From NCBI RefSeq assembly GCF_044704955.1, contig NC_091995.1:17918001-17982000 (forward strand): DNA of 64,000 bases. Direction: 5' to 3'. Position 1 is the stretch's first letter; the number at the start of each line of letters is the position of its first letter. The DNA is from Pristiophorus japonicus (taxonomy: Eukaryota). Both the position numbers and the translations under genes were made by a program. The notes beneath the pieces are model-generated. The model worked only from the letters and a program-made list of their open reading frames with translations. It ran no database searches and was not told the DNA's origin. Shown piece after piece: positions 11,137 through 64,000 of the stretch.

Positions 11137-11152
11137 CTAGAGCGGATCTATT
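11137..11152 (-). CDS. Gene A last coding exon (35-nt exon 11152-11118; K-IDPL-stop)
   Basis: tgttgctccag|35 nt|gtgtgt; TAG at 11139-11137 aligns to TAT (Tyr) in B. Confidence 0.7.
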
Positions 11153-25740: not shown

Positions 25741-25775
25741 CTGCTTTACAGACCGCTGCATAGACCGGATCTAGT
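25741..25775 (-). pseudogene. Gene B relic 35-nt Tyr-motif exon (LDPVYAAVCKA), donor mutated GT>GA
   Basis: ttttttgcttcag|35 nt|gagggt; homologous to 11118-11152; lies after B's stop codon. Confidence 0.68.
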
Positions 25776-25884
25776 CTGAAGCAAAAAAGAACACCAGAAA
25801 GGTTAGGCATTCAAAAAAAATACATTGAAGAGAAAGAAAGTGGATTCTTAAAAAATAGTTTTATATAAACAATTATCTCGTGGG

Positions 25885-42300: not shown

Positions 42301-43432
42301 CAGCCAGGCTTAGTAATGATGAAAACTATAGCCAGATCCCATGTTTGGTGGCCCGGCATCGACTCAGATTTGGAGTCTTGCGTGCGTCAATGCAACTCTT
42401 GCTCTCAACTGAGAAATGCACCCAGCGAGGCACTGCTAAGTTTGTGGTCATGGCGCTCCAAACCGTGGTCTAGGATCCACGTTGACTTCGCTGGCCTGTT
42501 TCTAGGAAAAATATGCCAGGTTGTTGTGGATGCTTATTCAAAATGGATTGAGTGTGTAATAATGTTTGTAAGCACGTCCACTGCCACCAGCGAAAACCTA
42601 TGAGCCATGTTTGTCACGCACAGCCTGCCCGATGTCCTTGTCAGCAACAAGGGGCCATGCTTCACCAGTGCTGAATTCAAGGAATTCATGACCCGCAATG
42701 GGATCAAGCACATCACATCTGCGCCATTCAAGCCCGCATCAAACGGCCAGGCAGAACGGGCAGTCCAAACCATCAAGCAAAGCTTGAAACGCGTGTCTGA
42801 AGGCTTCCTGCAGACCCGCCTGTCCTGCGTCCTGCTCAGCTACTTCACTAGACCTCACTCACTCACCGGGGTTCCCCCAGCTGAGCTGCTCATGAAACGG
42901 GTGCTCAAAACAAGGCTCTCTCTCGTCCAACCGGATCTCCATGATCATGTCGAGGGCAGGCAGCATCAACAAAGCATGTACCATGATCGCACAAATTTGT
43001 CACGTGATATTGAAGTCAATGACCCTGTATTTTTACTCAACTATGTACATGGTCCCAAATGGCTTGCTGCCAATAGCATAGCCAAAGAAGGGAGTAGGGT
43101 GTTTCAGATCAAACTTGCAAATGGACTAACCTGCAGAAAGCATTTGGAACAAAACAAACTGCGACTCACAGACAGCCACGAGCAACCTGAAGAGGACACC
43201 ACCAACTTTGACCCTCCGACACATACACAAGTAGCAACCAACATCACGGTTGACAACAAAGCTGAACTCATCATCACCAGTAGTCCTGCAAGGCGAGCTG
43301 CGCAGCAGCCCAGCGAAGAACCAACCAACTCACCTGCACCTGCATTTGTACCAAGACGGTCGACTAGGTAGCGGAAAGCCCCAGATCGTCTCATCCTGTA
43401 AATAAGTGTAATATTGAGTTTGGAGAGAGTGA

Positions 43433-45632: not shown

Positions 45633-46046
45633 TGTTTTGGATCGATAGACCCAGGTTCGGGATCTGGATTAATGTTAAATAAGAGACAAGACAAATGAAG
45701 TAAAGATAAAACACCATTTACTGTGAGAAAAGAAACATAATACAGTTTACGAAGAAGAGAGAAGTATGATAAGATGCAACAAAGCTCACAACCTTCGGCC
45801 CGTCGGGAACTCCACAACGACGGCTGGTCAGGAGCCTTGGGGGACCCGGCACCGATCGCAAATCATGGACCAATGTGAAGTTCAAAGAGCTACTGGACAG
45901 TTCCGTTCCTTTATACTAATGAACAAACATGGGTGCATGTGGCTTATGGCCAACTCCTAATCTGTAAGGCCCCAGCTGTTCCTCCACAAAGAATAAGACC
46001 TTGAGGCACCGATCGTCCCATAAACAAGATGGTGTGTGGATCAAGG

Positions 46047-46078
<32 letters not shown>

Positions 46079-46168
46079 AACAACATTCCACGAGGCATGA
46101 AACAGAAAACACACTGTAAATGTCGGAATATCATAATTAACCCTATGTGATTAACCCTATACAATACA
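45633..46168 (-). repeat. ERV 3' LTR
   Basis: Follows the PPT-like gggtggat; TG..CA ends; TATAAA at ~45911-45916; AGTAAA at ~45717-45722; (AG)n inside. Confidence 0.75.
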
Positions 46169-47164
46169 ATCCACCCGTGATATTTGGACATTCTCAGTAA
46201 TATAATCGAGTTGAAGGCGTAATGCATCAGTTACACGTTGAGTATGCGCAAGCAACGCCCGCAATCTGCACCAAAGAATACATACAATCAGTAATATCAG
46301 TAATAACACGACGAATAGAACGATAGGATGTATTAACAGCTTCAAAGTGGCGGATGTTTTTGGGGACCATCCATAAAAGATGTCCCACCAATGGTGTACT
46401 GTAAGGTCAGTGAACATTGTCACAACTCTGACCAAGGCTCCTTCACTGTAACTCACAGCAACTTGCAGAGTATGAAGAGTACGCCCTCTGTTTCTGTTAG
46501 GGACCAATAACATGCTAAAAATTGTTTCTCAAATGGAGTGTAACGAGTAGCAGCATCTGTCAATTTTCTAGACCAGATCCCAAATGGTATACGAGTGCCA
46601 TGTTGAATCTGCCACGAACTCCATACTGCAGTATCATTGGTAACGGATACCAATAGCTCAAAAGGCTGCCGAAGCACTCACGGGGCTAGGGGTAAAGCTT
46701 GAGCTTCGGTTCCTTTGGCTGCATCAAAAGCCACCTGCTGTTCCTTTCCCGACTCGAAGTGGGCCTTTTTTTCTTGTTATGGCATACAGTAGTTTTAATA
46801 ACATCGTGAGGTGAGGTATTGCCTCCCTTCCCAAGTGAATGCAAACTGGTACTGGGATTCTTCCGCGATTGGAATGGAGAAAAAGGCAATGGCCAGGTCG
46901 ATTACCGCATACCACTCCGCACCTTCTTCAGACAGCCGCTCTGTTATAGTTACTACATCTGTGACAGCGGTTGCCAGGGGAGGGGCAAATTTGTTCAGTT
47001 GTCGGGAGTCCACAGTCACCCTCCAACTTTTGTCGGCTTTCTGCACGGGCCAAACAGGGCTATTGTAGGGGCACACCGCATGTCTACTGATAACCGCCTC
47101 CAAGAGCCCTTGTATGGTTTCCCCTATTTCTTTGTGTCCCCCAGGTATTTGGTACTGTTTCATA

Positions 47165-47332
47165 GGAGTTAGATGTAGTCCTTACTACTAGGGGGATCAA
47201 GGGGTATGGCGAAAAAGCAGGAATGGGGTACTGAAGTTGCATGTTCAGCCATGAACTCACTGAATGGCGGTGCAGGCTCGAAAGACCGAATGGCCTACTC
47301 CTGCACCTATTTTCTATGTTTCTATGTTTCTA
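47165..47332 (+). mobile_element. Short CR1 3' end inserted in the ERV pol gene
   Basis: Same subfamily as 37900-38062, (TCTATGTT)n tail; interrupts ..SRIVM|MKQYQIPGG. Confidence 0.88.
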
Positions 47333-48294
47333 TCATCACTATACGCGACAGCCATGGTATTACCACTCGTTGCCACTTTGCTTCCACTGCAATCAGAGTG
47401 ATCGCCCGTATCCCGAATGAGAATCGCCCAAACGAGATTTGTGTGGGGTTCCCTTTAAAACGTCCATCTCAATAATATGTTCCTTTACTGCCGATATTAA
47501 GACCATTACCCAGCATGGAGGCTCATTTCCCAACGCCATTCTGTTAGTTGTTCAGCCAGCCGTCGTTTCTGCCCCTCAGAACCCATTAATCATCCTACGG
47601 GTCCCTGTCTGTTTCCTAGGATTTCCATGGACAATAGTAACTTCTGCCCCTGTGTTTACTAAAGCAACATCTCTTTGTATATCCCCCCCCACTCCCCCCA
47701 CCAATATATTGTCATCGGAATGTGTGGCCTCGGGTCTGCGAGAGCTTGGGTTGATGTGGTTCTAACGGGGAGTACTCCTGGATCCCGGCCACACCCCTAG
47801 TCGAGGGAATTACTAGCCTTCTACAGCTCTTCTACGTTGGAGTATAGGCTAGTGGGAAGTGGTTTATCCACATCCACAGACTTATCGCTATCCAACTTAA
47901 TCTCACTTACCTCCCTCCTTTCACCCTACCCTGTTCCCGAAACGCAGTGTTGCTTCCACATAGAATACATCGCTCCTGTTGGGATTCCATCAATTATTTC
48001 CATGGGGACCCCTGCCTTCAGTAAAGCTGCGAACATGTCCCTCCGCGTAATTCTTTTTTTGTCTTTCCTGACCCTGTACCTTTCCCAGAAGTCCATACTA
48101 TTAATTGTTTGCATACCTTGAATCTGACTGAATTATTGTCACTGGCACCCAAGTGCTCTCCCACTAAAAGCCCTTCTACCTGCCCAGCTTAATTCTCCAA
48201 AACTAAATCGGAAACTGCCCTTCTCGTGTTGGGCTTGCTCCATACTGACTAAAAAAGTTATCTTGAATGCATTTGAAGAATATCGCATTTTACG

Positions 48295-48995
48295 AAGTCC
48301 TTGTCCATAAAACACAAAAAGTTAGTATGCAGGTACAGCAAACAATGAGGAAGGCAAATGGAATGTTGCGCTTTATTGCAAGGGGAATAGAGTATAAAAT
48401 CAGAGAAGTCCTGCTACAACTGTACAGAGTATTGGAGTACTGCGTAAAATTTTGGTCTCCATATTTAAGGAAGGATATATTTGCATTGGAGGCTGTTCAG
48501 AGAAGGTTTACTAGGTTGATTCTGGAGATGAGGGGGCTGACATGAGGAAAGGTTGAGTAGGTTGGGCCTATACATATTGGAGCTCAGAAGAATGAGAGGT
48601 GATCTTATCGAAATATATGATAATGAGGGGGCTCAATAAGGTGGATGCAGAGAGGAGATTTCCACTCATAGGGGAAACTGAAACTAGGGGACATAGCCTC
48701 AGAATAAAGGGCGCCCATTTAAATCTGAGATAAGGAGGACATTTTTCTGTGAGAGGGTTGTAAGTCTATGGAATTCTCTGCCCCAGAGAGCTGTGGAGGC
48801 TGAGTCATTGAATATATTTAAGGTGGAGATAGACAGATTTTTGAGCGATAACGGAATAAAGGGTTATGGGGAGCGGGTAGGGATTTGGAGCTTAGCCCAT
48901 GATCAGATGAGCCATGAAATTTTTAAATGGTGGAGCAGGCTCGAGAGGCAAGGTGGCCTACTCCTGCTTCTGTTTCTTATGTTCTTATATTCTTA
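48295..48995 (+). mobile_element. CR1 3' fragment
   Basis: RKANGMLRFIARGIEYK..QRRFTRLI, tail (TTCTTATG). Confidence 0.88.
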
Positions 48996-48999
48996 AAAT

Positions 49000-49580
49000 G
49001 AATGACCTCACATTTACCTGCATTGAAATCTAACTGCCGATGCTTTGCCCACTCATTTAAGCTATCAATGTCTCTTTGTCATTTTATGTTCCCATCTACA
49101 GTACTTTCTATGCCACCTATCTTTGCTTCTTTGGTAAACTTGGATATAAAACTCTCTATTGTGCTATATAATTCATTGATGCATATTATGAATAGAAGAG
49201 GCCCCAGCACAGATCCTTGTGGGACATTAATAGTTATTTCCTTCTAATTGGAGTACATAGCAATTATCACTACTCTGTGTCTTCCACTGCCTAACCGATC
49301 ATCTAACAAGGTCAATAATTTGACTTAAATTCCATGAGCTTTACTTTCAGCCAACAGTCTCCTATGTGGAACGTTATGGAATACTTTTGTAGTCTATATA
49401 AACTACATCCATAGACATTCCTCTGTCTATTACATTAGTCTCTTCCTCAACAAATGCATAGTTAGACATGACCTATTCTTTACAATTTCATGTTAGCTCT
49501 CTCTAATCAGCTCAAATTTTTCCAACTGCTCAATCACTCTGTCCTTAATTATAGTTTCTAATAACATCCCCACAACTTGA
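49000..49580 (-). mobile_element. Old CR1 RT fragment
   Basis: Minus strand VPQGSVLGPLLFIICINEL..SKFTKEAKIGG. Confidence 0.75.
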
Positions 49581-51402
49581 TTGTCCTACTGTGTCAGCTG
49601 TGGCTCAGTGGTTAGCAATCCCGCCTCTAAGTCAGAAGCTTGTGTAGCACAAAAACTGTAGGCCAACACTCCAATCCAGTACTGAGGGAGTACTGAACTG
49701 TTGGAGGTGCCATCTTTCGGTTGAGACATTAAAGCGAGGCCCCATCTGCTCTTTCAAGTGAACGTAAAAGATCACAAGGCATTATTTTGAAGAAGAGCAG
49801 GGGAGTTCTCTCCTGTGTCTTGGCCAATACTTATCCCTCTATAAACAGAACAAAAAACAAATGATTTGGTCATTATCAAGTTACAGTTTATGGGAGCTAT
49901 CTTTTGTGAAAATTGGCTGCCGCTTTTCCTACATTACAAAAGTGACTGCACTCCCAAAGTAATTCATTGGCTGTTAAGCGCATGAAGAGTCCGTTGGTCA
50001 TGAAAAGCGCTATATAAATCCAAGTCTTTTTTCTTTTACTGAGAGCATTTAAAAATCAGACTGTGCATTCTACCAGTCAGTCTTTATTACTGTGGGGCAC
50101 GGGGGTCACTGCTGTTTCTGATCAATTAATGTTTTGCAGCCATGTTTTATTCAACACCATAGATTTCTTTGCTATGTTAAAAAATAAAATAGGGACCAAA
50201 TCAATAATATCTTATGTTTAATGGGATGTTATCTGTGATAGTGAGACGTGGGATGCAATCTGCGATCAAGATTTTCCAGCAAGAAGATTAATCATCATTA
50301 TGTTTTATTCATCCATTGAATCGTCAGTTAAACGTTGAACAAACTGTTATTTGTACATTTTATGGTCAAACACCGCTATCCACTTTGCTAGCATCATTTT
50401 TCAATCTTTGGAATCACCTCAAAACATGTTTCATATATTAGATCGTTTGCAGGAGTCCTGTGAAGTAGCATGATATTTATAATTTAGTCTTGTGGCCCCG
50501 TTTTCACTGAATTCCTCACTGCAGTCCCTTCCAAATGCAGGTCCAATACTTCAAGTTGTTTTCTTCTTCACTGTTGCATTTGGTTTAAATGTATTTTCAT
50601 TAAGTTTATGTTCAAGTAAAGCAACATGTTACAAACTTCACCGAAGAATGAAATGAACGAAATTGTGTTAAAAATAAGATCAACGGATCTATTAAAATTG
50701 AATAAAACACAGCCGGCAGAGTTCTTACCAAATATTTGACATGAGTACACAATAGCTTGAAAGTTGCTATAAAGGATCATTTATCCTATGCACTTTGTTT
50801 AGCCAAATTGTATTCCTATTGATAAAGAATCGGTTCACTCTTTAGTTACACATAACGCCCCCCAAGTGTTATGTTCTCATCCAACCCCTTAAAGCGTTTC
50901 TATCAAATTGATGTGCCTGCTTCTTTAGGAAGGTACAGGATCTACAGCTTAACAGGGTTAAAAAAAACATCTATTAAAGGGATATCATACCGAAGATTTT
51001 AAGTATTGGTACTTCAGTAACGATGTATAATTTCTAGGCTTATAACAAAAAATATGCGTACGGTTTATATTTTCTCTTTATGAAATCGAAGCAAATCACA
51101 CAGCCAAATATTAATTCACAAATCAGAATCCATCTGGAGTAGCACATGACCTTTCCTGGTCATCCAATCACTGGACAAGCATTATTGCCTTTGAGAAACG
51201 TATCAGATGCAAACAAGAAAGACGGAGGGTGGCGTGAAATTGTGCATGGGCAGGCATGCAAAACAGACAGTTTTGCATTGGTCCCCTGTTGTACGTTACA
51301 ACCGCTATTCGCCTCCATTTACATCAATGGATCGGAATATTGAAGATACGCTACAATGGTCAGCAAATGAGCAGCGGTACAGAAAAAGCAAGTAAAACTT
51401 CA

Positions 51403-54400
51403 CTAGAGTCCTGTAAGTGTTAGGGAGAGATGGTTCAACGCCACTGGGTTAGGGATAGAGCATTAGCTAGATCTTGCAAAGTCATTGGACGTTCATAGAT
51501 AATGTAACAGAAATGGCTTGTGTGTGGGACTGTGTTGCTTACAGGATAGCACGGTTACAGCAAAGAAGGAGGCAATTAGGTCTGTTGGAGCGGATTTTTG
51601 GACATATACCTGACTAGTATATGGGACCAAACATTTGTTTTTATTTTCCCCTTTAATGAATTTTGTAAGTGAGAATACTGATGCATTATGCTTTATATAA
51701 AAAAACAGTTAGACTTCAAGGTATGCTGGCCTTGAGTTATGGAGATAGGAAAGTGAGATAATGAATGACTGGAGAGATAATTAAGTGGGATGTTTGTCTA
51801 TACCGGTGCCAAAAGGCCTGCACTTGTTTATAATGCCCTGTCACAATGAAGGCTGGTTTATATCAAGAACTCAGCCTTGGATAGTAAACCTTGTAATGCG
51901 ATGATTAGACTTAAGGACTAATGCTAAAACATGTGATGTAAAGTGACGTAATTTGTAAGATAAAAGAACCTCACTGGAGATACCAAAGGGAGAAGTGGTT
52001 CAGAGACAGGGGTCTCTAACACTTCTCCCAAAGCTTTGTCTCCGATTTAATAAACCTCTCTTTATATATTATACAGTCTCGGAAATATTTTTCCATAACA
52101 GATCCGTTGAACCTGTGCAGGTTCTCTGCAAGAGCACTTCAGCTAGTCCCACTCCCCTGTCCTGTCCCCGTTACAAGAATGTAAGAACATAAGAACATAC
52201 GAAATAGGAGCAGGATTAGGCCATTTGGCCCCACGAGCTTGCTCCACCATTCAATAAGATCATGAGTGATTTGACTATGGACTCAGCTCCACTTCACTGC
52301 CCGCTCCCCATAATCTTTTACTCCCTTATCGCTCAAAAATCTGTCTATCTCCACCTTAAATATATTCAATGGCTCAACTTCTACAGCTCTCTGGGGCAGA
52401 GAATTCCATAGATTTAAAACCCTCTGAGAAAAGACATGCCTCCTCATCTCAGTTTTAAATGGGTGGCCCCTTATTCTAAGACTATGTCCCCAAGTTTTAG
52501 TTTCTCCTATGTGGAAATATCCTCCCTGCATTCACCATATCGAGCTCCCTCATTATCTTATAAGTTTCCATAAGATCATCTCTCATTCTTCTGAACTCCA
52601 ATATGTATAGTCCCAAACTACTCAATCTATCCTCATAAGGCAACCCCCTCATCTCCAGAATCAATGTAGTGAACCTTCTCTGAACAGCCTCCAATGCAAG
52701 TATATCCTTCCTTAAATATAGATACAAAAATTGTACACAGTACTGCAGGTGTGGCCTCAGCAATACCCTGTACAATTGTAGCCGGACTTCTCTGCTTTTA
52801 TACTCTATCACCCTTGCAATAAAGGCCAAGATTCCATTTGCCTTCCTGATTACTTGCTGTACCTGATACTAACGTTTTGTGTTTCATGCACAAGGACCCC
52901 CAGGTTTGTCGGACTGCAGCACTTTGCAATTTTTCTCCATTTATATTAGAATTTGCTGTTCTATTATTTCTGCCAAATTGGATAGCCTCACATTTTCCCA
53001 CATTATACTCTATCCGCCAAATTGTTGCCCACTCACTTAGCCTGTCTATATCCCTTTGCAGATATGTTGTGTCCCCCTCACAATTTGCTTTCCCACCCAT
53101 CTTTGTATCATTAGCAAACTTGGCTACGTCACACTCGGTCCCTTCATCTAAGTCATTAATATAGATTGTAAATAGTTAAGGCCTCTGCACTGATCCCTGC
53201 GGCACTAGTCACTGTTTGCCAACCGGAAAATGACCCATTTAACCTAACTCTCTGTTTTCTGTTAGTTAACCAATCCTCTATCCATGATAATATATTACTT
53301 CCAACCCTTCAATAAATACCGATGAAATGCTTATGACTGATAAAAACAGGTGGAAGAACTGCTTTTATCAGCGTAATATCTGCTTTTATCAGTGTAAGAC
53401 ATTTAAAGAACAGGAACATATTTTTTTAAATAATGTAAACATTTAAACACCTATTAAATAAGATAAGTTTATTGCTGGAGCCTTTTACGTTTGAATTTTA
53501 AAACATAATTAAATTCCAATTTGATTAATTTTAAATAAGGTTGAATTTTAAAACATAATTAAATTCCAATTTGATTCATTTTAAATAAGGTATTTTTTTA
53601 ACATTTATTTTAAGTGTTTGTCTATTGTTTTGCAGCTCGCTGCAAGTATGAATGGGGATCCCCTACTTGGATTAGTTGGACCGGCCCACGTCAACCCAGG
53701 TTCACATACCAAGCCCTTAAGCTCCTAGGATACATGGGTCTCTGCGAAGGCCTTCACGTACAGTCCTATCTCCGGGAACACCAGGTAAGTTCGTATACAT
53801 TTTGCAGGTCGGAAGCATCCATCCGCGGGAAGTTTCTGTCCGCAATTTGTGCGCCAATATGGCGTTCTTCACACTGAGGCACATTTCGTTTTTACCTGAT
53901 GTGGAGCTGTGTGCCTAAACTATGCTTCATTGACATTAAACACATTAGATGCCTGAATTCCAGTCATTGTAAGTTTACTTACCACAAAGTTAGAATCAGA
54001 CACATCGACTGAGCTAGCCATACCTATAATTTGTGAAAAGGAAGAAAATATGCGGATTTGAACAATTTACGGCGGTGATTTGTTACCTGTCCAAACGACG
54101 GATCTTGGAAGCAACCTTCCAGAGAAATCGAATCGAAAGTATGGCTCGAAGCAAAACTATTCCATAAAATTTAATAGCCGTATGAAAACATTCACTGTAC
54201 ATAGATGTGTAAAGTCAGAAGCACGCAGTCTGTTTACACAGCATATCGGACCGTTAATATAGCGAAAATGAAAAGTAACGTATTTCAAACAAAAGGAGAG
54301 GGTACATTATTAGGAATACATTCTAACAGGCACCAATGTGTTCACAGTAATTATAGCCATAGACTTAGTGTTACTTATATTAAGGAGTGCCCTTTATTAC

Positions 54401-57400
54401 GGTTGAATGCTAGCCGGACTAATGAATGTCGCACCAATGTGTTATATATTGAAAGGCTAATATAGACAATTTGTACGTAACTTGAACGTAACAAACCGGA
54501 ACAATCCTTACCATTTGGGTAGATATCGTCATAGATCTCGTCATCGCTAAACCATAAAGGGAGGAAGAAGCAAATGATTACGTGTTGAAAACATCCTGCA
54601 CAGGTCAGAGAAACATAAAGGCAGCAATATGTCACAGAGAGACCTACGCACCATTGCAGAGTTTGGGAGAAGTCTGTGGAAACACAAAAGGAACAAACAA
54701 CAAAATCGTAACTCTGTTATATCTGAAACCATATTTAGCACAGCTGTAGTTTAAAGCGCGTCACAGTTTTTTTTTAAATCATTTGTCTATTATAAATAAT
54801 AAATCTTTATCTACGGGCAGTGGGAGTGGAAAGGGGTTAGTGCAGTTGGATCTCATTCCATTATGCAACCCAGTCTCATCAAACTTTCGGGTAAGTGCAT
54901 CCTTTCTCGCTTTCGAGAAGGACAATGTGTAAAGAGAGTTTAGGACGGTTGCGAGCCAGAATCCAATGCGCGTGGTTGAACTGAATTTAATGAGGAGGCG
55001 GTTATTTGCACTGTGTCTGGCTGATTGGTACTCCGCCATCACATGACCTGATTGTTAATTGGTCCCCTTGGAGGATAATTCTCACCCAGAAGTTTCTCTG
55101 GAGTGCGTAATTGGAACCGCAGCCCAAGTTCTGAGTGACTTTGCAGAGTGTCATTCGAGCCATTATGACTTCAGAACTCCTCTGCAAGCAGCCAGAGAGG
55201 ATAGAGATCACAGCAAAAGCCTCCCAAACCCTTGTCCCCAGCCCAAGTGCATGCCTCCACTCCCCCCAGCCGCAGTCCCGGACATCCCAGCCCAAGTTCA
55301 TCCCTCATCTCCAGCCCGTGCTGCATTCCTAGCCGAAGTCCATTACCTCAGCGCGAGTGCTGCCTCCCCCAGCCGAAGTCCCTTACCCAAGTGCAAGTGC
55401 ATGACCTTAACTCCCACCGTAGTTGGGGCATTTTGTGTCGGTCATGGATTGTTAATAGGTTTATTGGGTAGGAAGTGAACAGTGACAGTTTAGTCACTTC
55501 CAGATTTCATCCACTGTGGGTGTAAAGGGGGTTTGTAGAATATGAGACATCTTCCCTGAACGCTCTCCCTTCCAATCCCCATCCTGCTTCCCCATCTCTC
55601 TCTCTCCCCATCTCTCACTCCACTCTCTTTCTCCCCCGACTTTCTCTCTTCCCCCCCCCCCCTCCGCCCCCATGTTTGTCTCCTCTTCCCCGACGTTTCT
55701 CTCTCCAGTCTTCCTGCCCGCCCCCGTTGTCTTTCTCTCTCCCCCGTATGTCTCTCTCCACCCGCGTATCTCTGTACTTCCTGGTGTCTCTCACTCCACG
55801 CCCCCCCCCCCGCAGTGCCTCCTTCACCCACCCCCCATGTCTCTCTCCCCCTGCAATGTCTCTCTCTCCCTCCCTCATGTCTCTCTGTCCCCTCCCCCCT
55901 TCACCGTGTCTAACTCTGTCACCCCTACCTGCCCACTCGCCGCCTCTATCACCGCCCAACGCCTCTCTCTACCCAGCCCGCTCTCCCCCCGCCCGTTCTG
56001 CCGCCTCCTCGCGCTCCCTGCCCGCCACCTCTCTCCCCACCCGCTGCCTCTCTCTCCCCGCCCATCTGTTGTCTCTCTAACCCCCGCCCGGTCGCTCCTC
56101 TCTCCCCGGCCGCCGTCTCTCTCCCCTTCCGCCATCTCTATCCCCCCCGCCGCCCGCCGCCTCTGTCTCTCTCCCCCACTATGTCCGATGTTTTCTCTCC
56201 CACAGAAGGCCGCAATAATGCAAAGACTGGAAGCAACGTTTCAGCAGCGGATTACATGCGGACTCATCGGAGCCCCACTTTCAGTTGCGATTTCTGCTCC
56301 GAGTCTGCGCATGCAGGAGAGGCATCGGTGCAGAGGACGCAGGTGCAGAAAAAACACAATGCATATCGGCACTCAGATATAAATAAGCATAAAAGTGAAA
56401 ATGTGTGCCTGATCCAACAAATCAAAAGAGCTGTCATACTGACAAAACAAAAATAATTCTTCAGAGTTTGTTGCTAAAGTATAGCATTGCCGATGCATTT
56501 GCTACCTCGAGAATTGACACTGATGGCGAGCCTCCCACATTCTACCCTACGTAAAGTAGAGGTGATCGAAATCTCGGCTGCCCATATCCTGACTCACACC
56601 AAGTCCCACACACCCTTCTGCTCGATTGGCTCTGTGTTAAGCAACTGCTCGATTTCAAAATTCCCATCTTTATTTACAAATCCCTCCATGGCCTTGCTCA
56701 TCCCTATCTCTATAATCTCCTCCAGCCCAAGAGCCGCCCCTCCCAGAGAGATGCGCTCCTCTAATTCTGTCCTCATGAGCATCCCTGATTATAATTGCTC
56801 AAACATTGGTGGCCGTGTCTGTAGCTGCTAGGAACCTAACTTCTGGAATTCCCCACGTAAATCTCTCTGCCTCTCTCCCGCTTTCCTCTCCTTATGACGC
56901 TCCATAAAAGCTACCTCTTTGACCAAGCTTGTGTTCATCTGCCCTAATGTCTTTTTACCTGGCTCGGTGTCAAATTTATTTTTTTGTTTTATAACACTCC
57001 TGTGAAGCGTCTTGGGACGTTTTACAACGTTAAAGGTGCTATATAAATACACGTTTTTGTTGTTATTATGGAGCACAGGGAACTCTATTTTCCTGGCGGG
57101 CGCAATAATTCAATAGCCCTCTAACAGTGGTTGTTGCTGATGCTGTCGCCAATTTTAAACTAAGGCCGGGCAGCAAACCCGCAGATCGGGTGGAACGTCG
57201 GTCTTACACTCCACATGATATCAACCTCCATTGACTTCAATGGTGAGTATAATCAGGACAGGGTGTAAAACCCATATTTCTCCCAATCTCATCAATTCCC
57301 GATGGTCGGGTGAGGTTATAATTGGCCCACGAGGTCAAGAACACAAGGGAAAGGGTATTACATCTCCAACAAGCGAGAGTCTAACCACCGCCCCTGAGAG

Positions 57401-60400
57401 TCAATGGCATTACCATCGCCGAATCCTCACCATCAACTTCCTGGGGGCATCAACATTGACCAGAAACTTAAATGGCCCAGCGACTTAATACTGTGGGTAC
57501 AAGAGCAGGTCAGAGGCTGGGTATTCTGCAACGAGTGTTTCACCTCCTGACGGCCACCCGGCCCCCCACCTGCACCGCGCCCCAAAGTATTTCTACCTCC
57601 AACAAGGCACAATTCAGGAGTGTAATAGAATTTCTCCACTTGCCTGACTGAGTGCAGCTCCAACAAGACTCAAGAAGCTCGACAGCATCCAGGACAAAGC
57701 AGCACGCCTGATTGGCACCCCATCTACCACATTAAATGTTCACTCCCTCCACCCCCAGCTGCAATGTGTACCATCTGCAAGATGCATGGAGCAACTCGCC
57801 AAGGCTTCTATGGCAGCACACCCCAAACCCACAACCTCTACCTAAGAGGACAGGGGCAGCAGGCGCATGGGAACACCGTCACCTGCAACTTCCCCTCCAA
57901 GCCACACACCATCCTGAATTGGAAATATATCGACCATTCCTTCATCATCACTGGGTCAAAATCATGGAACTCCCTATCAGCACCGGGAGCAGAAGACCTT
58001 CTACGTAAGGACTGCAGCGGTTCAAGAAGGCAGCTCACCGCCAAGGTTAATTAAGGAAGGCCAATAAATGCTGTCCTCAACAGCAACGTCCACATCCCAG
58101 GAACAAATACAAAAAATAGCAAGCAGCAAGCTACTGAGGTTGTTCCTCAGCAATTCACACACGTATAATATTGAGGACTCATTGAAATTTGTCAACTGGG
58201 AAAATTAAGTGATTCTTTAATCGGCGGTGCTCACCATCTACATCAGTGTCATCATAGAGCGGCCCGTTCCTTAGGGACAACAGACAAATACAGAAAATTA
58301 GTGCCACAGCATAGTTAGTAAACTAACTATAGAACAATTATAATACAACAGGTTGAAAATTTAAACTCTGAGATTCACTGACCTTCCAAATTGCGGGGGA
58401 ACATCTGTAAAAATAAAGTTAAGCATGAAAGATTTGTAGCGTTAATGCAATTTGTCTAAAGACATTTTGAGTACAGGAAACTGTTTCCATTTGCGGGAGG
58501 GTTAGTAACCTGAGGACATAGATTTAAAATAATTGGCAAAAGAACCAGAGGGGAGTTGAGGAGATTTGATTTATGCTGTGAGTTGTTATGATATGGAGTG
58601 CACTACCTGAAAGAATGGTAGAAGCACGATCCCTTCATCTACTGCACCCAGATGTTCTTTTCCTAACACCCCACCCCCGCTCCCCGCCCTTCGCAGGTTC
58701 CAGCCCAGATGTTCTCACCTTCCATCCCACCCAACATGCTCCGGCCTGATATATTCTGTTCCTTTCCCCTGCTTCCCCGGCTCGATATTCTCTCCCTCAC
58801 CTCCTCGATGCTCCTTCGGCGATATTCTCTACCCCGCCGCCCCACCCCATGCTCCAACCCCGATCTTCTCTCACCGCACCGCCGCCCCACGCCCCGCCGC
58901 CCGATGATCCTGTCCTGAACTTCTCCACGATGTTCCAGCCCCGTTGCTTCCATCCCTCATCCCCAATCCTCCTCCGGCCAGCGAACCTCCCCCTCCCACT
59001 ATTGCACGCATCTGATCCGCCCCCCACCCAACCTCTCTGTAGTTTGGTGCCACAGGCCTCTCCATCTAGGTGGCTGCGGGTGGGGAATCAAAGGTTGGAA
59101 ATGAAAATCAGGCCCCACCGTTAAGTTCAGCAGAGCTCGCGGTAAACCCGTCCCCGCGGGTTTCTCAGCCGCTTTCATGCACCTCTGCCTCCCGATTAAA
59201 ATTCAGGCCATTGTATCATGCAATCTCCTACCCTAGTGAGACCAGTTAGTTCGGTGTGTCTCACTGATCCAAACACTGGCTACCACTGGTACTGTGATTC
59301 AGTAGTACACCAGAGCAACGTAAACGCTACGCATGTTTTTTTTTGTATTCGTTCACTGGATGTGGGCATTAACTGGCAAGGTAATAGTTATTGCTCATCC
59401 CTAATTGCCCACGAGAAGGTGGTGTTGAGCTGCCTTCTTGAACAACAGAGGGCAGTTAAGAGTCGACCAACATTGCTGTGGGTCAGAAGTCACATATAGG
59501 CTAGACCAAGTATGAATGGCTGATGTCCTTCCCTAAAGGACATTCGTGAGCCAGATGGGTTTTTATGACAATCCGGTTGTTTCATGGTCACCATTACTGA
59601 TCCTAGCTTTTTCAGTCCAGATTGATTTAATTAACTGAATTTAAATTCCCCAGCTGCCATGGTGGGATTTTTAAAACTCGTGTCTCCGGATCACTAGTCC
59701 AGTAACATAATCACTATGCTACCATTCCGCGTGTGCATCACTCACCAGCTGGATTAATTTCATCACAGGTGCGAAAAGCGCTCTCCATCCAGGGGCTGGG
59801 AAAGAAGAAAAGAAAATCACATAGCTAGGGGAAAAAAAATCCAGCTAATTAAATAACGTTTTACCCTCTATAACCACGAACCAACCTTTGTGCTTGCGGA
59901 GCTAACTCTGTGGGATTAAAACTCAAAAATTAAGGTTTATCCATTGATGCAAGCAAGACATTTGATACTGTGAAAAAAGATTAAAATTATATAGACCTCT
60001 TATGTCCATCTAGGAACAATAATCAGTAAAACTACTGAAGTCCTTTCCGAACAATAATTGGTAATTAAAAAAATAATGCTTAAATGACTATTTAATATAT
60101 CGACCACTTAAATACTCACCATTAAAATGAATGTTACTGCAAGGCGCAATATTGCTTTGGGATTAAAACAGAAAAGTGAAAAGGTGTCAATGGATTGCAT
60201 ACCTAAATGCATATCAATTCAATAAAAACACCAAGAGAAGTGTCATCTTCACTTCAATATTCATTGACCGTTGTAAGCGTGCAAGGTCGAGGGCTGCAGG
60301 AATAAAAGGTGATGTAGAAAGTGTTACAACTTAACTACGGGCTTGTGGTAGCTTAATGGTTATAAGAACATAAGAACAGAAGAAATAGGAGCAGGATTAG

Positions 60401-63400
60401 GCCATTCGGCCCATCGAACCTGCTCCGCCATTGAACAAGATCATGGCTGACCTTCGGTCTCAGCTCCAACTTCCCGCCCGATATCCATATACGGTGATTC
60501 CCCATGAGCCAAAAATCTATCCCGCTCTGTCTTGAATATACTCAATGACTGAGCATCCGCAGCCCTCTGGGCTTAATAATTCCGCAGATTCACAATCAAT
60601 GGAGTGAAGAAATTTCTCCTCATCTCAGTACTAAAGGAGACTCCCCAGGCAATGGAAACATCCCTCAGCGTCTGCTCTGTTATGATAGTGGACATAATGC
60701 AGAGGCCTGTAGTAATGATGTGAAAACATGAGCTCAAATCCCAACACGGCAGCTGGTAAGGAATTTTTATTCAGTTAATTAAATAAATCTGGAACAAAAA
60801 GCTTGTATCAGTAATGGTGACTATGAAACTACCGGATTGTCGTAAAAACCAGTCTGGTTCACTAACGTCCTTTAGGGAAGGAAATCTGCCTTCACCCAGT
60901 CTGGCCTATAAGTGACTCCAAACCGACAGCAATGTGTTGAGTCTTAATAGGTCTCTGAAATGGCCTAGCAAGCCACCACCAATGTGGCTCACTATCACCT
61001 CCTGGAGGGCAATTAGGGATGGGAAATAAATGAATAAAAAATAAATAAACTTTTCATATTTGAATGTACAGCTTTCCAACTACAGTTCGGTCAAGATCAG
61101 CTAATGGTTTCAACTGAACGATAGCAGTATCGTTTATATAATAAGCCGACTCAATCCCTAACCATCTGCAAATGCTTAGTATTAAATATAATAATGTAAT
61201 ATAATTTCTGTACATAAACTGCAAGCAGCTCACTGCAAATCGTGAATGTAAAAGGAATAATCTAAGAATTGCTGTTAATTATATTTACGGAGGGACACTA
61301 GCTTCATAATGGAATATGGAATTTTTCGAATTCTATTTTGACAATGTGAATTCATTCATCCATTAACAAGGCAGGAAAGCTAAATATCACACCAATCAGC
61401 TAAAGGTTCATTTCCGAATTTAGCCCGGCTTATTTTCTAACCTATTCACGCAAAACGTATTTATCCTGATAAAACAGTGCAATTTGAACAAGTCACTTAT
61501 GAGCTAAACGAAAGTCATCATTCATGCTAAATCACAAAGCAAAAAGACACATTATAGAGCAGTAGAAAAACATTTATACATCATTTTTGAATACAACATG
61601 TTTTTTTTGGGGGGGGCGCGGGTAGGTTTACTAACCTCCGAAATTGTAGGCGATAAATTGTAGAAATCAAAATTAACAATTAATTTGAATAGATACAACA
61701 CTAAAATCAGAGTATCTGGCCATTATAATATTACTGTGTGTGGGAGCTTGCTGTGCTAAAATTAGCTGCCGTGTTTCTTGCATTACAACAGTGACTACAC
61801 GTTAAACGAAGTACTTCTTGATTAAGGCGCTTTGGGAAGTCCGGATATCGTGAAAGGCCTATATAAATGCAAGTCTTTCTTTATAAAAACATCAAAGGTT
61901 TTAGCGCAAACCAAATGTCACTGGCATTAGCTTGCATTTGTATGAATGTATCTACTTTGTGGATATATCCGGAAGCAAAATATTGTTCTTTACAATATTT
62001 ACCTTTTCTCATACCGCAAACTGCGGAGAACATGAGGAAAGCGGCTAAAGCTCCAGCAATGATGTACACGGATGTGAAGCTGAACTGTGACGCCTCGGAT
62101 TTCTCTGTGGTCGGTTTTCCTGGTCGGAAGACAAAATAAGAGATTGGTTTCACCCAGAACACCACTTGCTACCTCCCACTTTCCCTGCGAGTGAATGTAC
62201 ACTGTGCCCCGAAACCAACCAATATATATCGTAATTTCAATGGACTGATGCAGTCGTGCTGGTTTTATCCATCTCTCCTACGTTTGCTGATTGGGCTTGT
62301 GATATTAGTTATTTATATTTTATTATTTTAACGGCTTTTTAAAAATTAATTAAAGTCAATTGTTATCGAAAATATATCGTGACAAAACTCTTAAAGATTA
62401 TAATCTCGTGATTGAATTAGCTGTTCTCAGTACTCTACGCGTTTTTTATGTGTCAGAGTGTATGCATATGTGTTAATGTAGGCATATGTGTTAATGTAAG
62501 CTTGTGTGTGAGTGTTTATATGTGTGTGTATGCATGCGTATCTGCGTGTGAGTGTGTATCCGTGTGTATATGTGTGTGTTTGTGTCTGTATATCTGTCTG
62601 TGTCTGTATCTCTGTTTGCATATCTGTGTGTATATGTGTATGTATGTGTGTGTATGTGCGTGTGTGTGTATAGCTGTGTGTGCACATGTGCGTGTGTGTG
62701 TGTGTATTTGTGCGTGTGTGCATGTGTCTGGGTGTATGAGTGCGTTATTCTATGGGTGTGTGTTTGTATGCGTGTGTGTCTGTATGTGTAAGTTTGTGCA
62801 GACTATCATAACTTTTTAATAAATGTTTTGGTGATAAAGTGGAGATATTTATTAAACACAAAGGGAGACATGCTTATAACCCATGCATCCGGACATAGAA
62901 ATAGAAATAATAACAGAAAAAAATAACAGAAAATGCTGTATTTACTCAGCAAGTCAGATGGCGTCTATTGAGAAAGAAACAGAATTATCGTTTCAGGTCG
63001 ATGGACTTGAGTCAGTATTGGAAAAAAAAGTTAGAGGTGTAACAGATTTTAAGCCATGCGGGGCAGGAATGTGGGGACGGAGGAAAGAATAAAAGAGAAG
63101 GCCTGTGATAGGCAGAAGTGATTATATGACAGAAGGTATGATAGGACAACGCAAAAGTCATAGAAATATAATATTTTCCTCATTTTCATTAGGTTGACAT
63201 ATTTTCTTTACGTGTAAGATCCTCCAAGTTTAGTCTGCTGTGATATAGTAACGGACTGACCGACTCGGGAATTATGGTGGAAAAGTTTGCAAGAAGCAGT
63301 CAACTCACGCAGTACATTAAGCATTGTTCCTTGTCCGTATGTTTCGGCCACTTCCATTAGTTCCACTTTGCAGTAGTAATTCCCTGAATCATACTGTCTC

Positions 63401-63647
63401 ACGTCTTTGATAGAAATGGAAGCGTCCCTCCTTTGCGTGAAATCCTCGGCACTTGCCCGGGATAGACGCCCGCTGAATTCCGTCGTTTGGTCGCTGACTT
63501 CAGGTCCACCTTTAAAGTTTTTGTGCCAATTGAAATTACCGACCCCTGGAGGCCCTTCATGCGTGCAGTTCATGAGCACCGACTGCCTCTCCGTGGCGTT
63601 AATGAAGGACGGGATTTTAATTACTTTGATGTTGTCTGCAGCAATTC
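51403..63647 (-). CDS. NCR3-like: Gene C (5' partial): NKp30/NCR3-like IgV receptor with uncharged TM and long Tyr-motif tail; exons 63647-63309, 62119-62003, 60293-60269, 60154-60120, 59907-59886, 59795-59746, 58404-58383, 58269-58235, 54673-54652, 54546-54512, 54023-53983, probably 53914-53896 and 51410-51403
   Basis: Every exon is flanked by AG/GT, and the phases chain without a stop: tail RK-ALDLARLQ-RNIAPCSNIHFN-ELAPQAQ-SPWMESAFRTCDEINPA-DVPPQFG-RNGPLYDDTDVD-DFSQTLQ-CDDEIYDDIYPN-GMASSVDVSDSNFV-AHSSTS-GL*; the last two exons are less certain; no leader exon found in the window. Confidence 0.8.
51583..52100 (+). mobile_element. Solo LTR inserted in a CR1 3' tail
   Basis: TGTT..AACA ends, AATAAA at ~52049, flanks ggtc/gatc (imperfect 4-bp TSD); flanks rejoin into a CR1 tail. 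Confidence 0.72.
52185..53310 (-). mobile_element. CR1 3' portion
   Basis: LQRDIDRLSEWA..GKCEAIQFG, RPHLQYCVQF, GHSLRIRG, (TAAGAACA) tail. Confidence 0.92.
53491..53590. repeat. 50-bp AT-rich tandem duplication
   Basis: ttgaattttaaaacataattaaattccaatttgatt(a/c)attttaaataagg x2. Confidence 0.9.
53983..54023 (-). CDS. Gene C 41-nt tail exon (GMASSVDVSDSNFV)
   Basis: ttttcttccttttcacaaattatag|41 nt|gtaagt. Confidence 0.78.
54512..54673 (-). CDS. Gene C micro-exon module 4 (22 nt 54673-54652 + 35 nt 54546-54512; DFSQTLQ-CDDEIYDDIYPN)
   Basis: tttccacag|..|gtgcgt; tggtttag|..|gtaagg; 105-nt intron. Confidence 0.83.
55560..56180. repeat. C/T-rich low-complexity tract
   Basis: Mostly (CT)n and Cn on the + strand; the overlapping long ORFs are low-complexity. 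Confidence 0.85.
56570..57065 (+). mobile_element. L2 LINE 3' fragment
   Basis: ..DWL..KQLLDFKI....FTNPSM, ..FWNSPRK.., tail tgtgaagcg..ttgggacgtttt..taaaggtgctatataaat. Confidence 0.72.
57365..58115 (+). mobile_element. LINE 3' fragment (RT C-terminus)
   Basis: Frameshifted ..IDQKLKW..AGQRLGILQRV..RSVIEFSPLA..KLDSIQDKAARLIG. Confidence 0.75.
58235..58404 (-). CDS. Gene C micro-exon module 3 (22 nt 58404-58383 + 35 nt 58269-58235; DVPPQFG-RNGPLYDDTDVD)
   Basis: tttttacag|..|gtcagt; tccctaag|..|gtgagc; 113-nt intron. Confidence 0.83.
59746..59907 (-). CDS. Gene C micro-exon module 2 (22 nt 59907-59886 + 50 nt 59795-59746)
   Basis: atcccacag|..|gttggt; tttcccag|..|gtgagt; 90-nt intron. Confidence 0.78.
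60120..60293 (-). CDS. Gene C micro-exon module 1 (25 nt 60293-60269 + 35 nt 60154-60120)
   Basis: ttcctgcag|..|gtcaat; tcccaaag|..|gtgagt; 114-nt intron. Confidence 0.75.
60363..60640 (-). mobile_element. CR1 3'-end fragment
   Basis: (TAAGAACA) tail and ORF2 end. Confidence 0.78.
62003..62119 (-). CDS. Gene C stalk + transmembrane exon
   Basis: tcttccgaccag|117 nt|gtaaat; RKPTTEKSEASQFSFTSVYIIAGALAAFLMFSAVCGMRK; no charged TM residue. Confidence 0.85.
62445..62795. repeat. Degenerate (TG)n microsatellite
   Basis: Alternating purine-pyrimidine tract of ~350 bp. Confidence 0.92.
63309..63647 (-). CDS. NCR3-like: Gene C Ig V-set (VJ-type) exon, NKp30-like
   Basis: ttggcag|339 nt|gtgagt; MNCTHEG..VGNFNW..EVSDQTTEFSGRL..DVRQYDSGNYYCKVE..YGQGTMLNVL. 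Confidence 0.93.
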
Positions 63648-64000
63648 CTGCCAATAGATGATGATATGTGATTAGCAAGACGCACCGAGTTCTAACTTCA
63701 TCTGAACCAAGTGCTGAAGATGCGGGAGGCCTCCAGTGAAGAGGCCAGAGGGACCGTGCCAATCCGGACAGTCAGTGGTGAAGGGACATTCGAAATGCAG
63801 TAACCTTGATCCCGCTGGGTGTGTTTTTCCAAGGCACCGCGCCATAGTTATGGCCTTATTAGCATGGGAGGATTACGAGACCACCAGTGCACGGACAGGC
63901 ATTTCCAATCAATTAACTTTAGCCGTTTTCTCACAACCCGCCCCGCTGCAGGAGTGGTGGCGTGGGGCCTCGGAAAATAAAATGGATTGGTTACAGCACA

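What the first reader, a model, noticed from the sequence alone, without database searches (positions are those of the whole stretch)
54512..58269. Acidic YDDT / YDDI motifs instead of ITIM or ITAM in gene C
Seen: GPLYDDTDVD and DDEIYDDIYPN. Neither matches the strict ITIM (I/V/L/S-x-Y-xx-L/V) or ITAM spacing. Established: YDDV/YDDI motifs bind the SLP-76 SH2 domain (ADAP YDDV, CD6 C-terminal YDDI), and related acidic motifs bind Nck; EIY preceded by acidic residues is a preferred Src/Syk-family substrate. Inference: an NKp30-type ectodomain wired to a CD6/ADAP-like scaffold tail, i.e. co-stimulatory or modulatory rather than classically inhibitory. Modules 1 and 2 have Cys near the Tyr position (APCSNI, RTCDEI), consistent with TAY>TGY loss of two further sites.
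Basis: partly seen in the sequence, partly recalled or inferred. Interest (0 to 1): 0.8.

Follow-up and report, generated by a model that had tools for sequence, protein, structure and literature searches.

The report
Shark NKp30-like receptor acidic tyrosine tail
A shark immune-receptor gene of the NKp30 family has an inner tail, encoded by tiny exons and also found in the horn shark, whose tyrosine motifs are acidic (YDDT, YDDI) rather than the usual "inhibit" or "activate" signals, which suggests a different, still untested, way of signalling.

Summary
Both strings are there, on the minus strand, in two 35-nt exons (58269-58235 NGPLYDDTDVD; 54546-54512 DDEIYDDIYPN). Both have AG/GT borders and are in phase with the TM exon of gene C. 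The bare exon pattern is common by chance. The real support is a horn shark (Heterodontus francisci) RefSeq protein, "NCR3-like" X1-X8, 62-67% identical in the V domain, whose tail carries the same modules in the same order (chain alignment z 5.8-8.8; 0 of 100 shuffles reach it).

None of the three tyrosines fits ITIM, ITSM or ITAM. Every module has Y, C or H at the same place, seven residues from the exon end:
- Module 3: Tyr in both species (LYDDT / IYHDI).
- Module 4: Tyr here, His in horn shark.
- Module 1: Cys in both.
- An extra upstream module with IYDDI exists in horn shark and was not found here.

So the motif type (Y-D/H-D/E-I) is conserved while single sites turn over. Papers confirm that ADAP YDDV and CD6 YDDI bind the SLP-76 SH2 domain, but Src-family SH2 domains (pYEEI), a hemITAM-like reading and AP-2 sorting fit too. 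No RNA run was listed, and the 3' end of the gene is unresolved. The scan has noted NKp30-family clusters elsewhere in this genome, but no listed title or summary mentions this tail.

The parts
63309..63647 (-). Gene C V exon (339 nt, phase 1-1): V-set Ig domain with a germline-joined J-like end (YGQGTMLNV)
   Evidence: Pfam V-set and Ig_3. Best PDB sequence match is NKp30. 62-67% identical to horn shark NCR3-like. Borders.
62003..62119 (-). Gene C stalk/TM exon (117 nt, phase 1-1). TM is FSFTSVYIIAGALAAFLMFSAVCG with no charged residue. The donor ...AAAAG|gtaaat leaves phase 1.
   Evidence: Homologous to the horn shark TM segment in P0155/P0156.
60269..60293 (-). Module 1, exon a (25 nt; LDLARLQ)
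   Evidence: AG/GT borders and phase. Horn shark counterpart is PEPVGLQ.
60120..60154 (-). Module 1, exon b (35 nt; NIAPCSNIHFN). Cys (TGC) sits at the tyrosine register.
   Evidence: 9 of 11 identical to horn shark NIAPCSNFQFN.
59886..59907 (-). Module 2, exon a (22 nt; LAPQAQ)
   Evidence: Horn shark has EAPQRQ.
59746..59795 (-). Module 2, exon b (PWMESAFRTCDEINPA). It is most likely 50 nt, using the strong acceptor ttcttctttcccag at 59795. Cys (TGT) sits at the tyrosine register.
   Evidence: Horn shark has a longer module ending ...FSNYDEINPA, with Tyr at the Cys position.
58383..58404 (-). Module 3, exon a (22 nt; VPPQFG)
   Evidence: Horn shark has VPPPLE. Recovered by the chain alignment.
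58235..58269 (-). Module 3, exon b (35 nt; NGPLYDDTDVD), the YDDT motif. This is the only tail tyrosine shared with horn shark (NETIYHDINQD).
54652..54673 (-). Module 4, exon a (22 nt; FSQTLQ, then a split Cys codon)
   Evidence: Horn shark has FPPPFQ-C.
54512..54546 (-). Module 4, exon b (35 nt; DDEIYDDIYPN): the YDDI motif overlapping a YPN (pYxN) site. Horn shark has DEEVHSDIPPN, with no Tyr.
53983..54023 (-). Tentative next exon (41 nt; MASSVDVSDSNFV; acceptor attatag, donor gtaagt; phase 1->0). Weak resemblance to horn shark ITDMVGSGDGADFDDA.
   Evidence: Not significant on its own.
50551..50610 (-). Relic or alternative last exon: HKLNENTFKPNATVKKKTT-stop, matching the end of horn shark isoform X4 (...KPNEKILELYSTVKKKTT-stop). 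Asn replaces the Tyr. There is no AG at the homologous border. AATAAA lies about 240 nt downstream (50309).

Best explanation
Gene C is a real member of the shark NCR3 (NKp30) family with an uncharged transmembrane segment. Its long cytoplasmic tail is built from repeated pairs of micro-exons (22-25 nt plus 35-50 nt). Each pair descends from one ancestral signalling unit, which carries a tyrosine seven residues before the end of its second exon, followed by acidic residues and Ile (Y-D-D/E-I). In this genome, modules 3 (LYDDT) and 4 (EIYDDI, overlapping IYPN) keep the tyrosine and modules 1 and 2 have Cys. Shown here: the exons, their phases, their conservation in horn shark, the register of the Tyr/Cys/His position, and the absence of ITIM, ITSM, ITAM and of a charged TM residue. 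Inferred: after ligand binding a Src- or Syk-family kinase phosphorylates these acidic sites, which are close to the preferred substrates of those kinases. The phosphotyrosines then dock SH2 proteins that prefer acidic +1/+2 and aliphatic +3 residues. Candidates are SLP-76/BLNK-type adaptors, Src-family kinases and Nck, with GRB2/GADS at pYPN. The receptor would then act as its own scaffold and give a positive or modulatory signal, not an SHP-1/2-mediated inhibitory one. Which sites carry Tyr differs between species, so the number of docking sites seems to matter more than any single site.
For: Exons in phase with AG/GT borders. The horn shark RefSeq NCR3-like isoforms X1-X8 carry the same modules in the same order after a homologous TM segment. 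Chain alignment gives z 5.8-8.8, with 0 of 100 shuffles reaching it. Genes A and B of the same window have one pair with the same 22 + 35 nt design and the Tyr (or TAG) at the same register. The nurse shark NCR3 entry in GenBank ends ...NPLYADMHD... No ITIM, ITSM or ITAM fits, by direct reading. NKp30 is the best solved-structure match. Papers: ADAP ExYDDV and CD6 ...DDpYDDISAA bind the SLP-76 SH2 domain, and CD6 YQN and CD28 YMN bind GADS/GRB2. All Src-family SH2 domains prefer pYEEI (PMC4584950). The toad Bombina NCR3 has a short tail with SIYEEV, so an acidic Y-E/D-E/D-V/I site is not confined to sharks in this family.
Against: Only one of the three tyrosines (module 3) is conserved in horn shark, and there the context is TIYHDI, which fits the ITSM consensus. 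The YDDI tyrosine is His and YPN is PPN in horn shark. YDDT has Thr at +3, which is poor for the SH2 classes named. Horn shark SNYDEI also fits the loose ITIM consensus. No transcript evidence exists for this species: no RNA run was listed. The last exon and stop codon were not found with confidence. The extra YDDI module of horn shark was not found here. No binding data exist for any shark protein.
Confidence: 0.5

Rival explanations
1. The tail is real, but in this species gene C is decaying. Signalling sites are being lost one by one and the remaining YDDT/YDDI strings are leftovers with no selected function.
For: Modules 1 and 2 have Cys at the Tyr register. The horn shark upstream YDDI module was not found. 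The X4-type last exon has Asn for Tyr and no AG at the homologous border. The other terminal exons were not found convincingly. The intron before module 4 is swollen to 3.7 kb with repeats. No RNA run was listed. The neighbours A and B have a stop at or before the Tyr.
Against: The V exon, the TM exon and all eight tail micro-exons are open, in phase and keep AG/GT borders. Module 1 is Cys in horn shark too, so that is not a recent loss. Module 4 has Tyr here where horn shark has His, so sites are present here that are absent there.
Confidence: 0.2
2. YDDI works mainly as an unphosphorylated YxxO sorting signal, helped by the acidic cluster. It would bind the AP-2 mu2 subunit and drive endocytosis or recycling of the receptor rather than SH2 docking.
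For: Y-D-D-I fits Y-x-x-bulky hydrophobic, and so do horn shark YDDI, YDEI and YHDI. Acidic clusters commonly accompany sorting signals (background knowledge, not tested).
Against: YDDT does not fit, since Thr is not bulky hydrophobic. A repeated array of such sites is more typical of scaffolds. The flanking acidic residues and the Ile at -1 match kinase substrate preferences. The two roles are not exclusive.
Confidence: 0.15
3. Module 4 is a hemITAM-like site: a single YxxI/L preceded by three acidic residues (DDE-I-YDDI). It would recruit Syk when receptors are clustered, making gene C an adaptor-independent activating receptor.
For: CLEC-2 signals through one YXXL downstream of a triacidic sequence that is critical for its phosphorylation, and it uses Syk (PMC3576117, abstract). 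The window has D-D-E at -4 to -2 and Ile at +3.
Against: Known hemITAMs sit in N-terminal tails of type II C-type lectins and have Leu at +3. The tyrosine and part of the acidic run are not kept in horn shark (DEEVHSDI). The other modules lack the triacidic run.
Confidence: 0.1
4. The micro-exons are chance open stretches and the true tail of gene C is something else.
For: The bare pattern is frequent, 63 hits in the window. The modules show no DNA similarity to one another. There is no transcript evidence in this species.
Against: Collinear match to the horn shark protein tail. Identical phases and a fixed Tyr register. The same exon design occurs in paralogues A and B.
Confidence: 0.05

Closest known systems
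Horn shark (Heterodontus francisci) 'natural cytotoxicity triggering receptor 3-like' isoforms X1-X8 (XP_067865360 to XP_067865369)
   Same: Closest relative and probable orthologue. V domain 62-67% identical, with a homologous uncharged TM. The tail modules come in the same order: NIAPCSN, DEINPA, DVPP, and QC-D.E...DI.PN. Acidic Y-D/H-D/E-I sites are present.
   Different: It has an extra first module (WIYDDI), Tyr in module 2, and His instead of Tyr in module 4, with no YPN. Its module 3 reads TIYHDI, which is ITSM-like. It has identifiable terminal exons, including an alternative end ...LYSTVKKKTT. Automated annotation only, with no functional study found.
Shark NCR3 family (nurse shark NCR3, QTT61898.1; Kinlein et al. 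2021, Immunogenetics 73:333, cited in PMC10450919 and PMC12227049; full text not held)
   Same: Non-rearranging VJ-type V domain followed by stalk/TM and small cytoplasmic exons. A tyrosine micro-exon of the same design is present (…NPLYADMHD).
   Different: The nurse shark protein and the A/B-type paralogues have one such unit. In other species classic ITIM exons follow it (VQYATL, VLYATV). Gene C has four units with acidic motifs and no ITIM.
Mammalian NKp30 (NCR3)
   Same: Best solved-structure match of the V domain (E 2e-10). One V domain, a stalk and one TM.
   Different: Mammalian NKp30 signals through partner chains bound through a charged TM residue and has a short tail (background knowledge). 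Gene C has no charged TM residue and has a long tail with its own tyrosines.
CD6 C-terminal region and ADAP (SLP-76 SH2 ligands)
   Same: Acidic run followed by Y-D-D-I/V. CD6 combines a pYxN site (GADS/GRB2) with pYDDI (SLP-76) to bind the GADS/SLP-76 complex bivalently (PMC5440646; PMC2211848). Module 4 has YDDI and YPN.
   Different: There is no sequence homology beyond the motif. In gene C the two tyrosines are only four residues apart, probably too close for two SH2 domains at once, against 33 in CD6. No binding was tested. This is resemblance, not membership.
Fish CD22/Siglec-like receptors with PIYDDV repeats (anchovy 'B-cell receptor CD22', XP_063064868.1)
   Same: IgSF receptor tail with repeated ...PIYDDV... 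sites.
   Different: There the acidic sites alternate with classic ITIMs (IQYASV). It is a multi-domain ectodomain and a distant relative only.

Membership tests
NCR3 / NKp30 family | Single V-set Ig domain with a germline-joined J-like G-x-G-T end | tested here: met
   Pfam V-set 1.7e-7 and Ig_3 6.6e-8. The V exon ends ...YGQGTMLNVL.
NCR3 / NKp30 family | Closer in sequence to NKp30 than to other V domains | tested here: met
   The top four PDB matches are NKp30 entries (2e-10). The next are antibody V domains at 4e-7, with SIRP-alpha at 1.6e-5. Nurse shark NCR3 matches at 2.3e-23, 46% identity.
NCR3 / NKp30 family | Charged TM residue for pairing with CD3-zeta/FcR-gamma (mammalian activating design) | tested here: not met
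   The TM FSFTSVYIIAGALAAFLMFSAVCG has no K, R, D or E. This feature defines the mammalian signalling mode, not the family in sharks.
NCR3 / NKp30 family | MHC linkage; binding of B7H6 | not testable with these tools
   No chromosome context or binding assay is available.
ITIM receptors | [I/V/L/S]-x-Y-x-x-[I/V/L] | tested here: not met
   GPLYDDT has -2 P and +3 T. DEIYDDI has -2 E. DDIYPNG has -2 D and +3 G. Read-through past the 54512 donor would add ITIM-like strings (SSYVQI, IVYISL, SIYNTL), but these lie behind a good gtaagg donor and have no counterpart in horn shark.
ITAM receptors | Two YxxL/I sites 6-8 residues apart | tested here: not met
   Tyr-Tyr distances are 19 and 4 residues.
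ITSM receptors | T-x-Y-x-x-[V/I] | tested here: not met
   No Thr at -2 in the window. Horn shark module 3 (TIYHDI) does fit.
SLP-76 SH2 ligands (ADAP, CD6, HPK1 type) | [D/E]-x-Y-D-D-[V/I] sequence | tested here: met
   Module 4 E-I-Y-D-D-I fits ExYDDV/I (motif from PMC2211848, and PMC5440646). Module 3 P-L-Y-D-D-T does not, with P at -2 and T at +3.
SLP-76 SH2 ligands (ADAP, CD6, HPK1 type) | Phosphorylation-dependent binding of the SLP-76 SH2 domain | not testable with these tools
   Needs peptide binding or pull-down assays.
GRB2/GADS ligands | pY-x-N | tested here: met
   Y-P-N in module 4; motif class from PMC5440646. Sequence level only. Horn shark has PPN.
hemITAM | Single YxxL preceded by a triacidic run | tested here: inconclusive
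   D-D-E-I-Y-D-D-I has the acidic run, but Ile at +3. It sits in a type I C-terminal tail and is not conserved in horn shark.

The most novel reading that the evidence does not exclude
The shark NCR3 family holds a third signalling design besides ITIM tails and charged-TM partners. It is a receptor that acts as its own LAT/CD6-like scaffold, made by duplicating a two-micro-exon tyrosine unit into an array of acidic Y-D-D/E-I docking sites. The array has been kept, with turnover of individual sites, since sawsharks and horn sharks diverged. It would recruit SLP-76/GADS-type or Src-family proteins directly.
Probability: 0.25. Interest if true: 0.65.

Novelty: new variant of a known kind. Interest (0 to 1): 0.45.

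Why it matters
NKp30 is one of the few natural killer receptors traceable from sharks to humans, and how its ancestors signalled is open. A family member with no inhibitory motif, no partner-chain anchor and a repeated acidic tyrosine tail, conserved between two distant shark lineages, gives a concrete and cheap test: phosphopeptide pull-downs and chimeric receptors. The question is whether self-contained scaffold signalling existed in this family early in jawed vertebrates. The case also shows how micro-exon pairs, which gene predictors miss without RNA data, can carry the whole signalling part of an immune receptor. The catshark model of the same gene stops right after the TM exon. The value is for comparative immunology, and nothing here is shown functionally.

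Tried and rejected
- Word-based protein search with the V-exon ORF found nothing. With the horn shark tail it found only horn shark isoforms. With the V+TM part it added only a catshark fusion model without the tail.
- RNA evidence: the look-up of sequencing runs on 63200-64000 listed no run, so none was listed and read laying could not be used.
Exon borders and intron conservation in the orthologue are therefore unknown.
- BLASTN between the four modules and against the window gave no similarity. The duplications are old, and only design and peptide register link the modules.
- A low-penalty chain alignment overfitted, with a shuffled mean of 238 against 286 for the real tail. It was replaced by higher penalties.
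- A counterpart of horn shark module 0 (WIYDDI) was searched for in 60294-62020, and the X1-type terminal exons in 44000-54511. Nothing convincing came up. The 54023-53983 exon is tentative.
- A leader exon directly upstream of the V exon was rejected. There is no in-frame ATG, and the only nearby ATG would need a 38-nt intron. The leaders of A and B lie 1.9 and 3.2 kb upstream, so gene C's is probably beyond the window end.
- Kinlein et al. 2021, Flajnik et al. 2012 and Ohta & Flajnik 2015 are not held. Whether acidic tails were already described for shark NCR3 could not be checked.
Comparisons were made exon by exon. The script read candidate exon pairs through only to test for open frames.

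Full report
**What is in the sequence**

The window is repeat-rich vertebrate DNA with three tandem minus-strand genes. Each has one V-set Ig exon:
- Gene A at 13.2-13.6 kb.
- Gene B at 27.8-28.1 kb.
- Gene C at 63309-63647.

Notes of earlier agents of this scan call the genome Japanese sawshark. I did not verify that.

The two strings of the finding are present on the minus strand. NGPLYDDTDVD is read from 58269-58235 and DDEIYDDIYPN from 54546-54512.

**Gene model, read exon by exon**

| Exon | Coordinates | Length | Peptide or note |
|---|---|---|---|
| V | 63647-63309 | 339 nt | phase 1-1 |
| Stalk/TM | 62119-62003 | 117 nt | phase 1-1, no charged TM residue, donor AAAAG\|gtaaat |
| M1a | 60293-60269 | 25 nt | LDLARLQ |
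| M1b | 60154-60120 | 35 nt | NIAPCSNIHFN |
| M2a | 59907-59886 | 22 nt | LAPQAQ |
| M2b | 59795-59746 | 50 nt | PWMESAFRTCDEINPA |
| M3a | 58404-58383 | 22 nt | VPPQFG |
| M3b | 58269-58235 | 35 nt | NGPLYDDTDVD |
| M4a | 54673-54652 | 22 nt | FSQTLQ |
| M4b | 54546-54512 | 35 nt | DDEIYDDIYPN |

- All exons have AG and GT borders.
- The phase goes 1->2->1 through every pair.
- The intron inside each pair is 90 nt (module 2) or 105-114 nt (modules 1, 3 and 4).
The acceptor 15 nt upstream (ttcttctttcccag) is much better, keeps the frame and fits the longer horn shark module.

**Is it more than chance?**

The design alone is not. An open AG-22/25-GT ... AG-35-GT arrangement occurs 63 times on the two strands of the window. 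The four modules have no detectable DNA similarity to each other.

The support comes from outside the window. A full HMMER scan with the V exon found P0005, which is 67% identical. It is XP_067865368, one of eight RefSeq isoforms of a Heterodontus francisci gene named NCR3-like or SIRP-beta-2-like.

The full isoform (P0156, 320 aa) has a homologous uncharged TM, then these tail segments:
- ...QCQRSNDWIYDDIPLA
- PAPEPVGLQSNIAPCSNFQFN
- DEAPQRQSFSSSCMDMFSNYDEINPA
- DVPPPLERNETIYHDINQD
- DFPPPFQCDEEVHSDIPPN
- terminal exons

tblastn of this protein against the window hits M1b, M2b, M3a and M4b in the right order and strand. A chain alignment of the horn shark tail against 48000-62018 (minus strand) recovers M1b, M2b, M3a, M3b and M4b. 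It scores 120 against 65.5 +/- 9.4 for shuffled tails (z 5.8), and 75 against 37 +/- 4.3 (z 8.8) with a harsher jump penalty. None of 100 shuffles reaches the real score.

The horn shark isoforms differ by single codons at module borders (QCQRSND / QCQSND; LAPAPEP / LAPPEP). That pattern usually comes from transcript alignments, but I could not see the underlying evidence. I take the micro-exons as real coding exons with about 0.85 confidence.

**The tyrosine register**

In every b exon the residue seven places before the 3' end is Y, C or H.

| Module | This window | Horn shark |
|---|---|---|
| M0 | not found | Y (WIYDDI) |
| M1 | C (TGC) | C |
| M2 | C (TGT) | Y (NYDEI) |
| M3 | Y (LYDDT) | Y (IYHDI) |
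| M4 | Y (IYDDI) | H (VHSDI) |

Genes A and B carry one pair of the same 22 + 35 nt design:
- Gene A (11278-11257 and 11152-11118) has TAG at the register.
- Gene B (25898-25877 and 25775-25741) has Tyr (PVYAAV). It has lost both donors and has an in-frame TAA in exon a.

The nurse shark NCR3 entry in GenBank ends ...NPLYADMHD... So this is a family-wide signalling micro-exon, multiplied in the gene C lineage with an acidic consensus Y-D-D/E-I.

It is undecided for module 1, which is Cys in both species.

**Motif class**

By direct reading none of the three tyrosines fits ITIM or ITSM, and the spacings (19 and 4) exclude an ITAM.

In the papers held:
- ADAP has two ExYDDV motifs that bind the SLP-76 SH2 domain, and a DxYDDV site of HPK1 binds BLNK (PMC2211848).
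- The CD6 peptide ...DNDDpYDDISAA binds the SLP-76 SH2 domain with KD 0.3-2 uM.
- CD6 Y629 (YQN) and CD28 YMN bind GADS/GRB2, and CD6 needs both sites for co-stimulation (PMC5440646).

So the 'established' part of the finding holds. But the motif is not specific to SLP-76:
- All Src-family SH2 domains prefer pYEEI, with acidic +1/+2 and Ile at +3 (PMC4584950).
- D-D-E-I-Y-D-D-I recalls a hemITAM, a single YXXL behind a triacidic run (PMC3576117).
- Y-D-D-I is also a YxxO sorting signal (background knowledge).

**Conservation of the sites**

Only the module 3 tyrosine is shared by the two species. The YDDI tyrosine and the YPN site are absent in horn shark, which instead has YDDI in module 0 and YDEI in module 2.

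If the genome is indeed a sawshark, the two lineages diverged near the base of living sharks, a long time on any estimate (background knowledge). The picture is then conservation of the modules and of the motif type, with turnover of individual sites.

An acidic site also occurs in the short tail of a toad NCR3 (SIYEEV). Most other relatives carry classic ITIMs (VQYATL, VLYATV).

**What stays open**

- The 3' end of gene C is unresolved. After 54512 a tentative 41-nt exon (54023-53983) follows.
- A clear homologue of the alternative last exon of horn shark isoform X4 lies at 50610-50551. It reads ...KPNATVKKKTT-stop against ...ELYSTVKKKTT-stop. It has Asn for Tyr and no AG at the homologous border.
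- Module 0 was not found.
- The leader exon is probably beyond the window end.
- No RNA run was listed for the V exon.
- The key paper on shark NCR3 genes is not held.

**Verdict**

The ectodomain is NKp30-type. The tail is a non-ITIM, non-ITAM array of acidic tyrosine sites.

That it works as a CD6/ADAP-like positive scaffold is a reasonable hypothesis, but it rests on motifs only. I give 0.5 to the broader claim of phosphotyrosine docking of positive adaptors or kinases, and less to any single partner. The rivals are decay of the gene in this species (0.2), sorting signal (0.15), hemITAM-like Syk site (0.1) and chance exons (0.05).

It is a new variant within the known shark NCR3 family, of moderate interest to comparative immunologists.

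Noticed in passing
window 62003-62119 (-): The TM exon of gene C is 117 nt with phase 1 on both sides, so skipping it keeps the frame. Horn shark isoforms X5, X7 and X8 lack exactly this segment (V domain joined directly to the tail). This hints at a secreted or TM-less isoform.
   Followed up: partly
window 50551-50610 (-): Homologue of the alternative last exon of horn shark isoform X4 (shared ...TVKKKTT-stop). Here Asn stands for the Tyr of LYSTV, and there is no AG at the homologous exon border. AATAAA lies at 50309.
   Followed up: partly
window 11118-11152 and 11257-11278 (-); 25741-25775 and 25877-25898 (-): Genes A and B each have one 22 + 35 nt micro-exon pair of the same design as gene C. 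Gene A has TAG at the tyrosine register. Gene B keeps Tyr (PVYAAV) but has GT>AT and GT>GA at the two donors and an in-frame TAA in the first exon.
   Followed up: partly
window 54375-54511 (-): If the gtaagg donor at 54511 were not used, read-through would add 48 residues with three ITIM-like strings (SSYVQI, IVYISL, SIYNTL), then a stop at 54375 with AATAAA at 54398. There is no counterpart in horn shark, so this is probably non-coding.
   Followed up: no
window ~15551 and ~31462 (-): Leader exons of genes A (MHWAAVSWAITMFF) and B (MNWAAVTWAITMFS), followed by gtaagc, lie 1.9 and 3.2 kb upstream of their V exons. Gene C has no in-frame ATG within the 350 nt available upstream of its V exon, so its leader is probably outside the window.
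   Followed up: partly
P0128 (Bombina bombina NCR3, XP_053545387.1): The toad NCR3 has a short tail ending ...SESIYEEVEMKK, an acidic Y-E-E-V site that also fits the loose ITIM consensus. It may link the acidic motif of the shark gene C lineage to tetrapod NCR3.
   Followed up: no
P0003 (Scyliorhinus canicula LOC119975537): The catshark model fuses an A/B-type ITIM gene with a gene C-type V+TM. It ends by read-through right after the TM exon, so the micro-exon tail seems to be missed by annotation there.
   Followed up: no
window 3881-5944 (+), 39389-43371 (+), 55500-58100: Long reverse-transcriptase ORF (687 aa), a retrovirus-like gag-pol stretch, and LINE/SINE fragments plus CT-rich low-complexity DNA filling the 3.7-kb intron between modules 3 and 4.
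   Followed up: no
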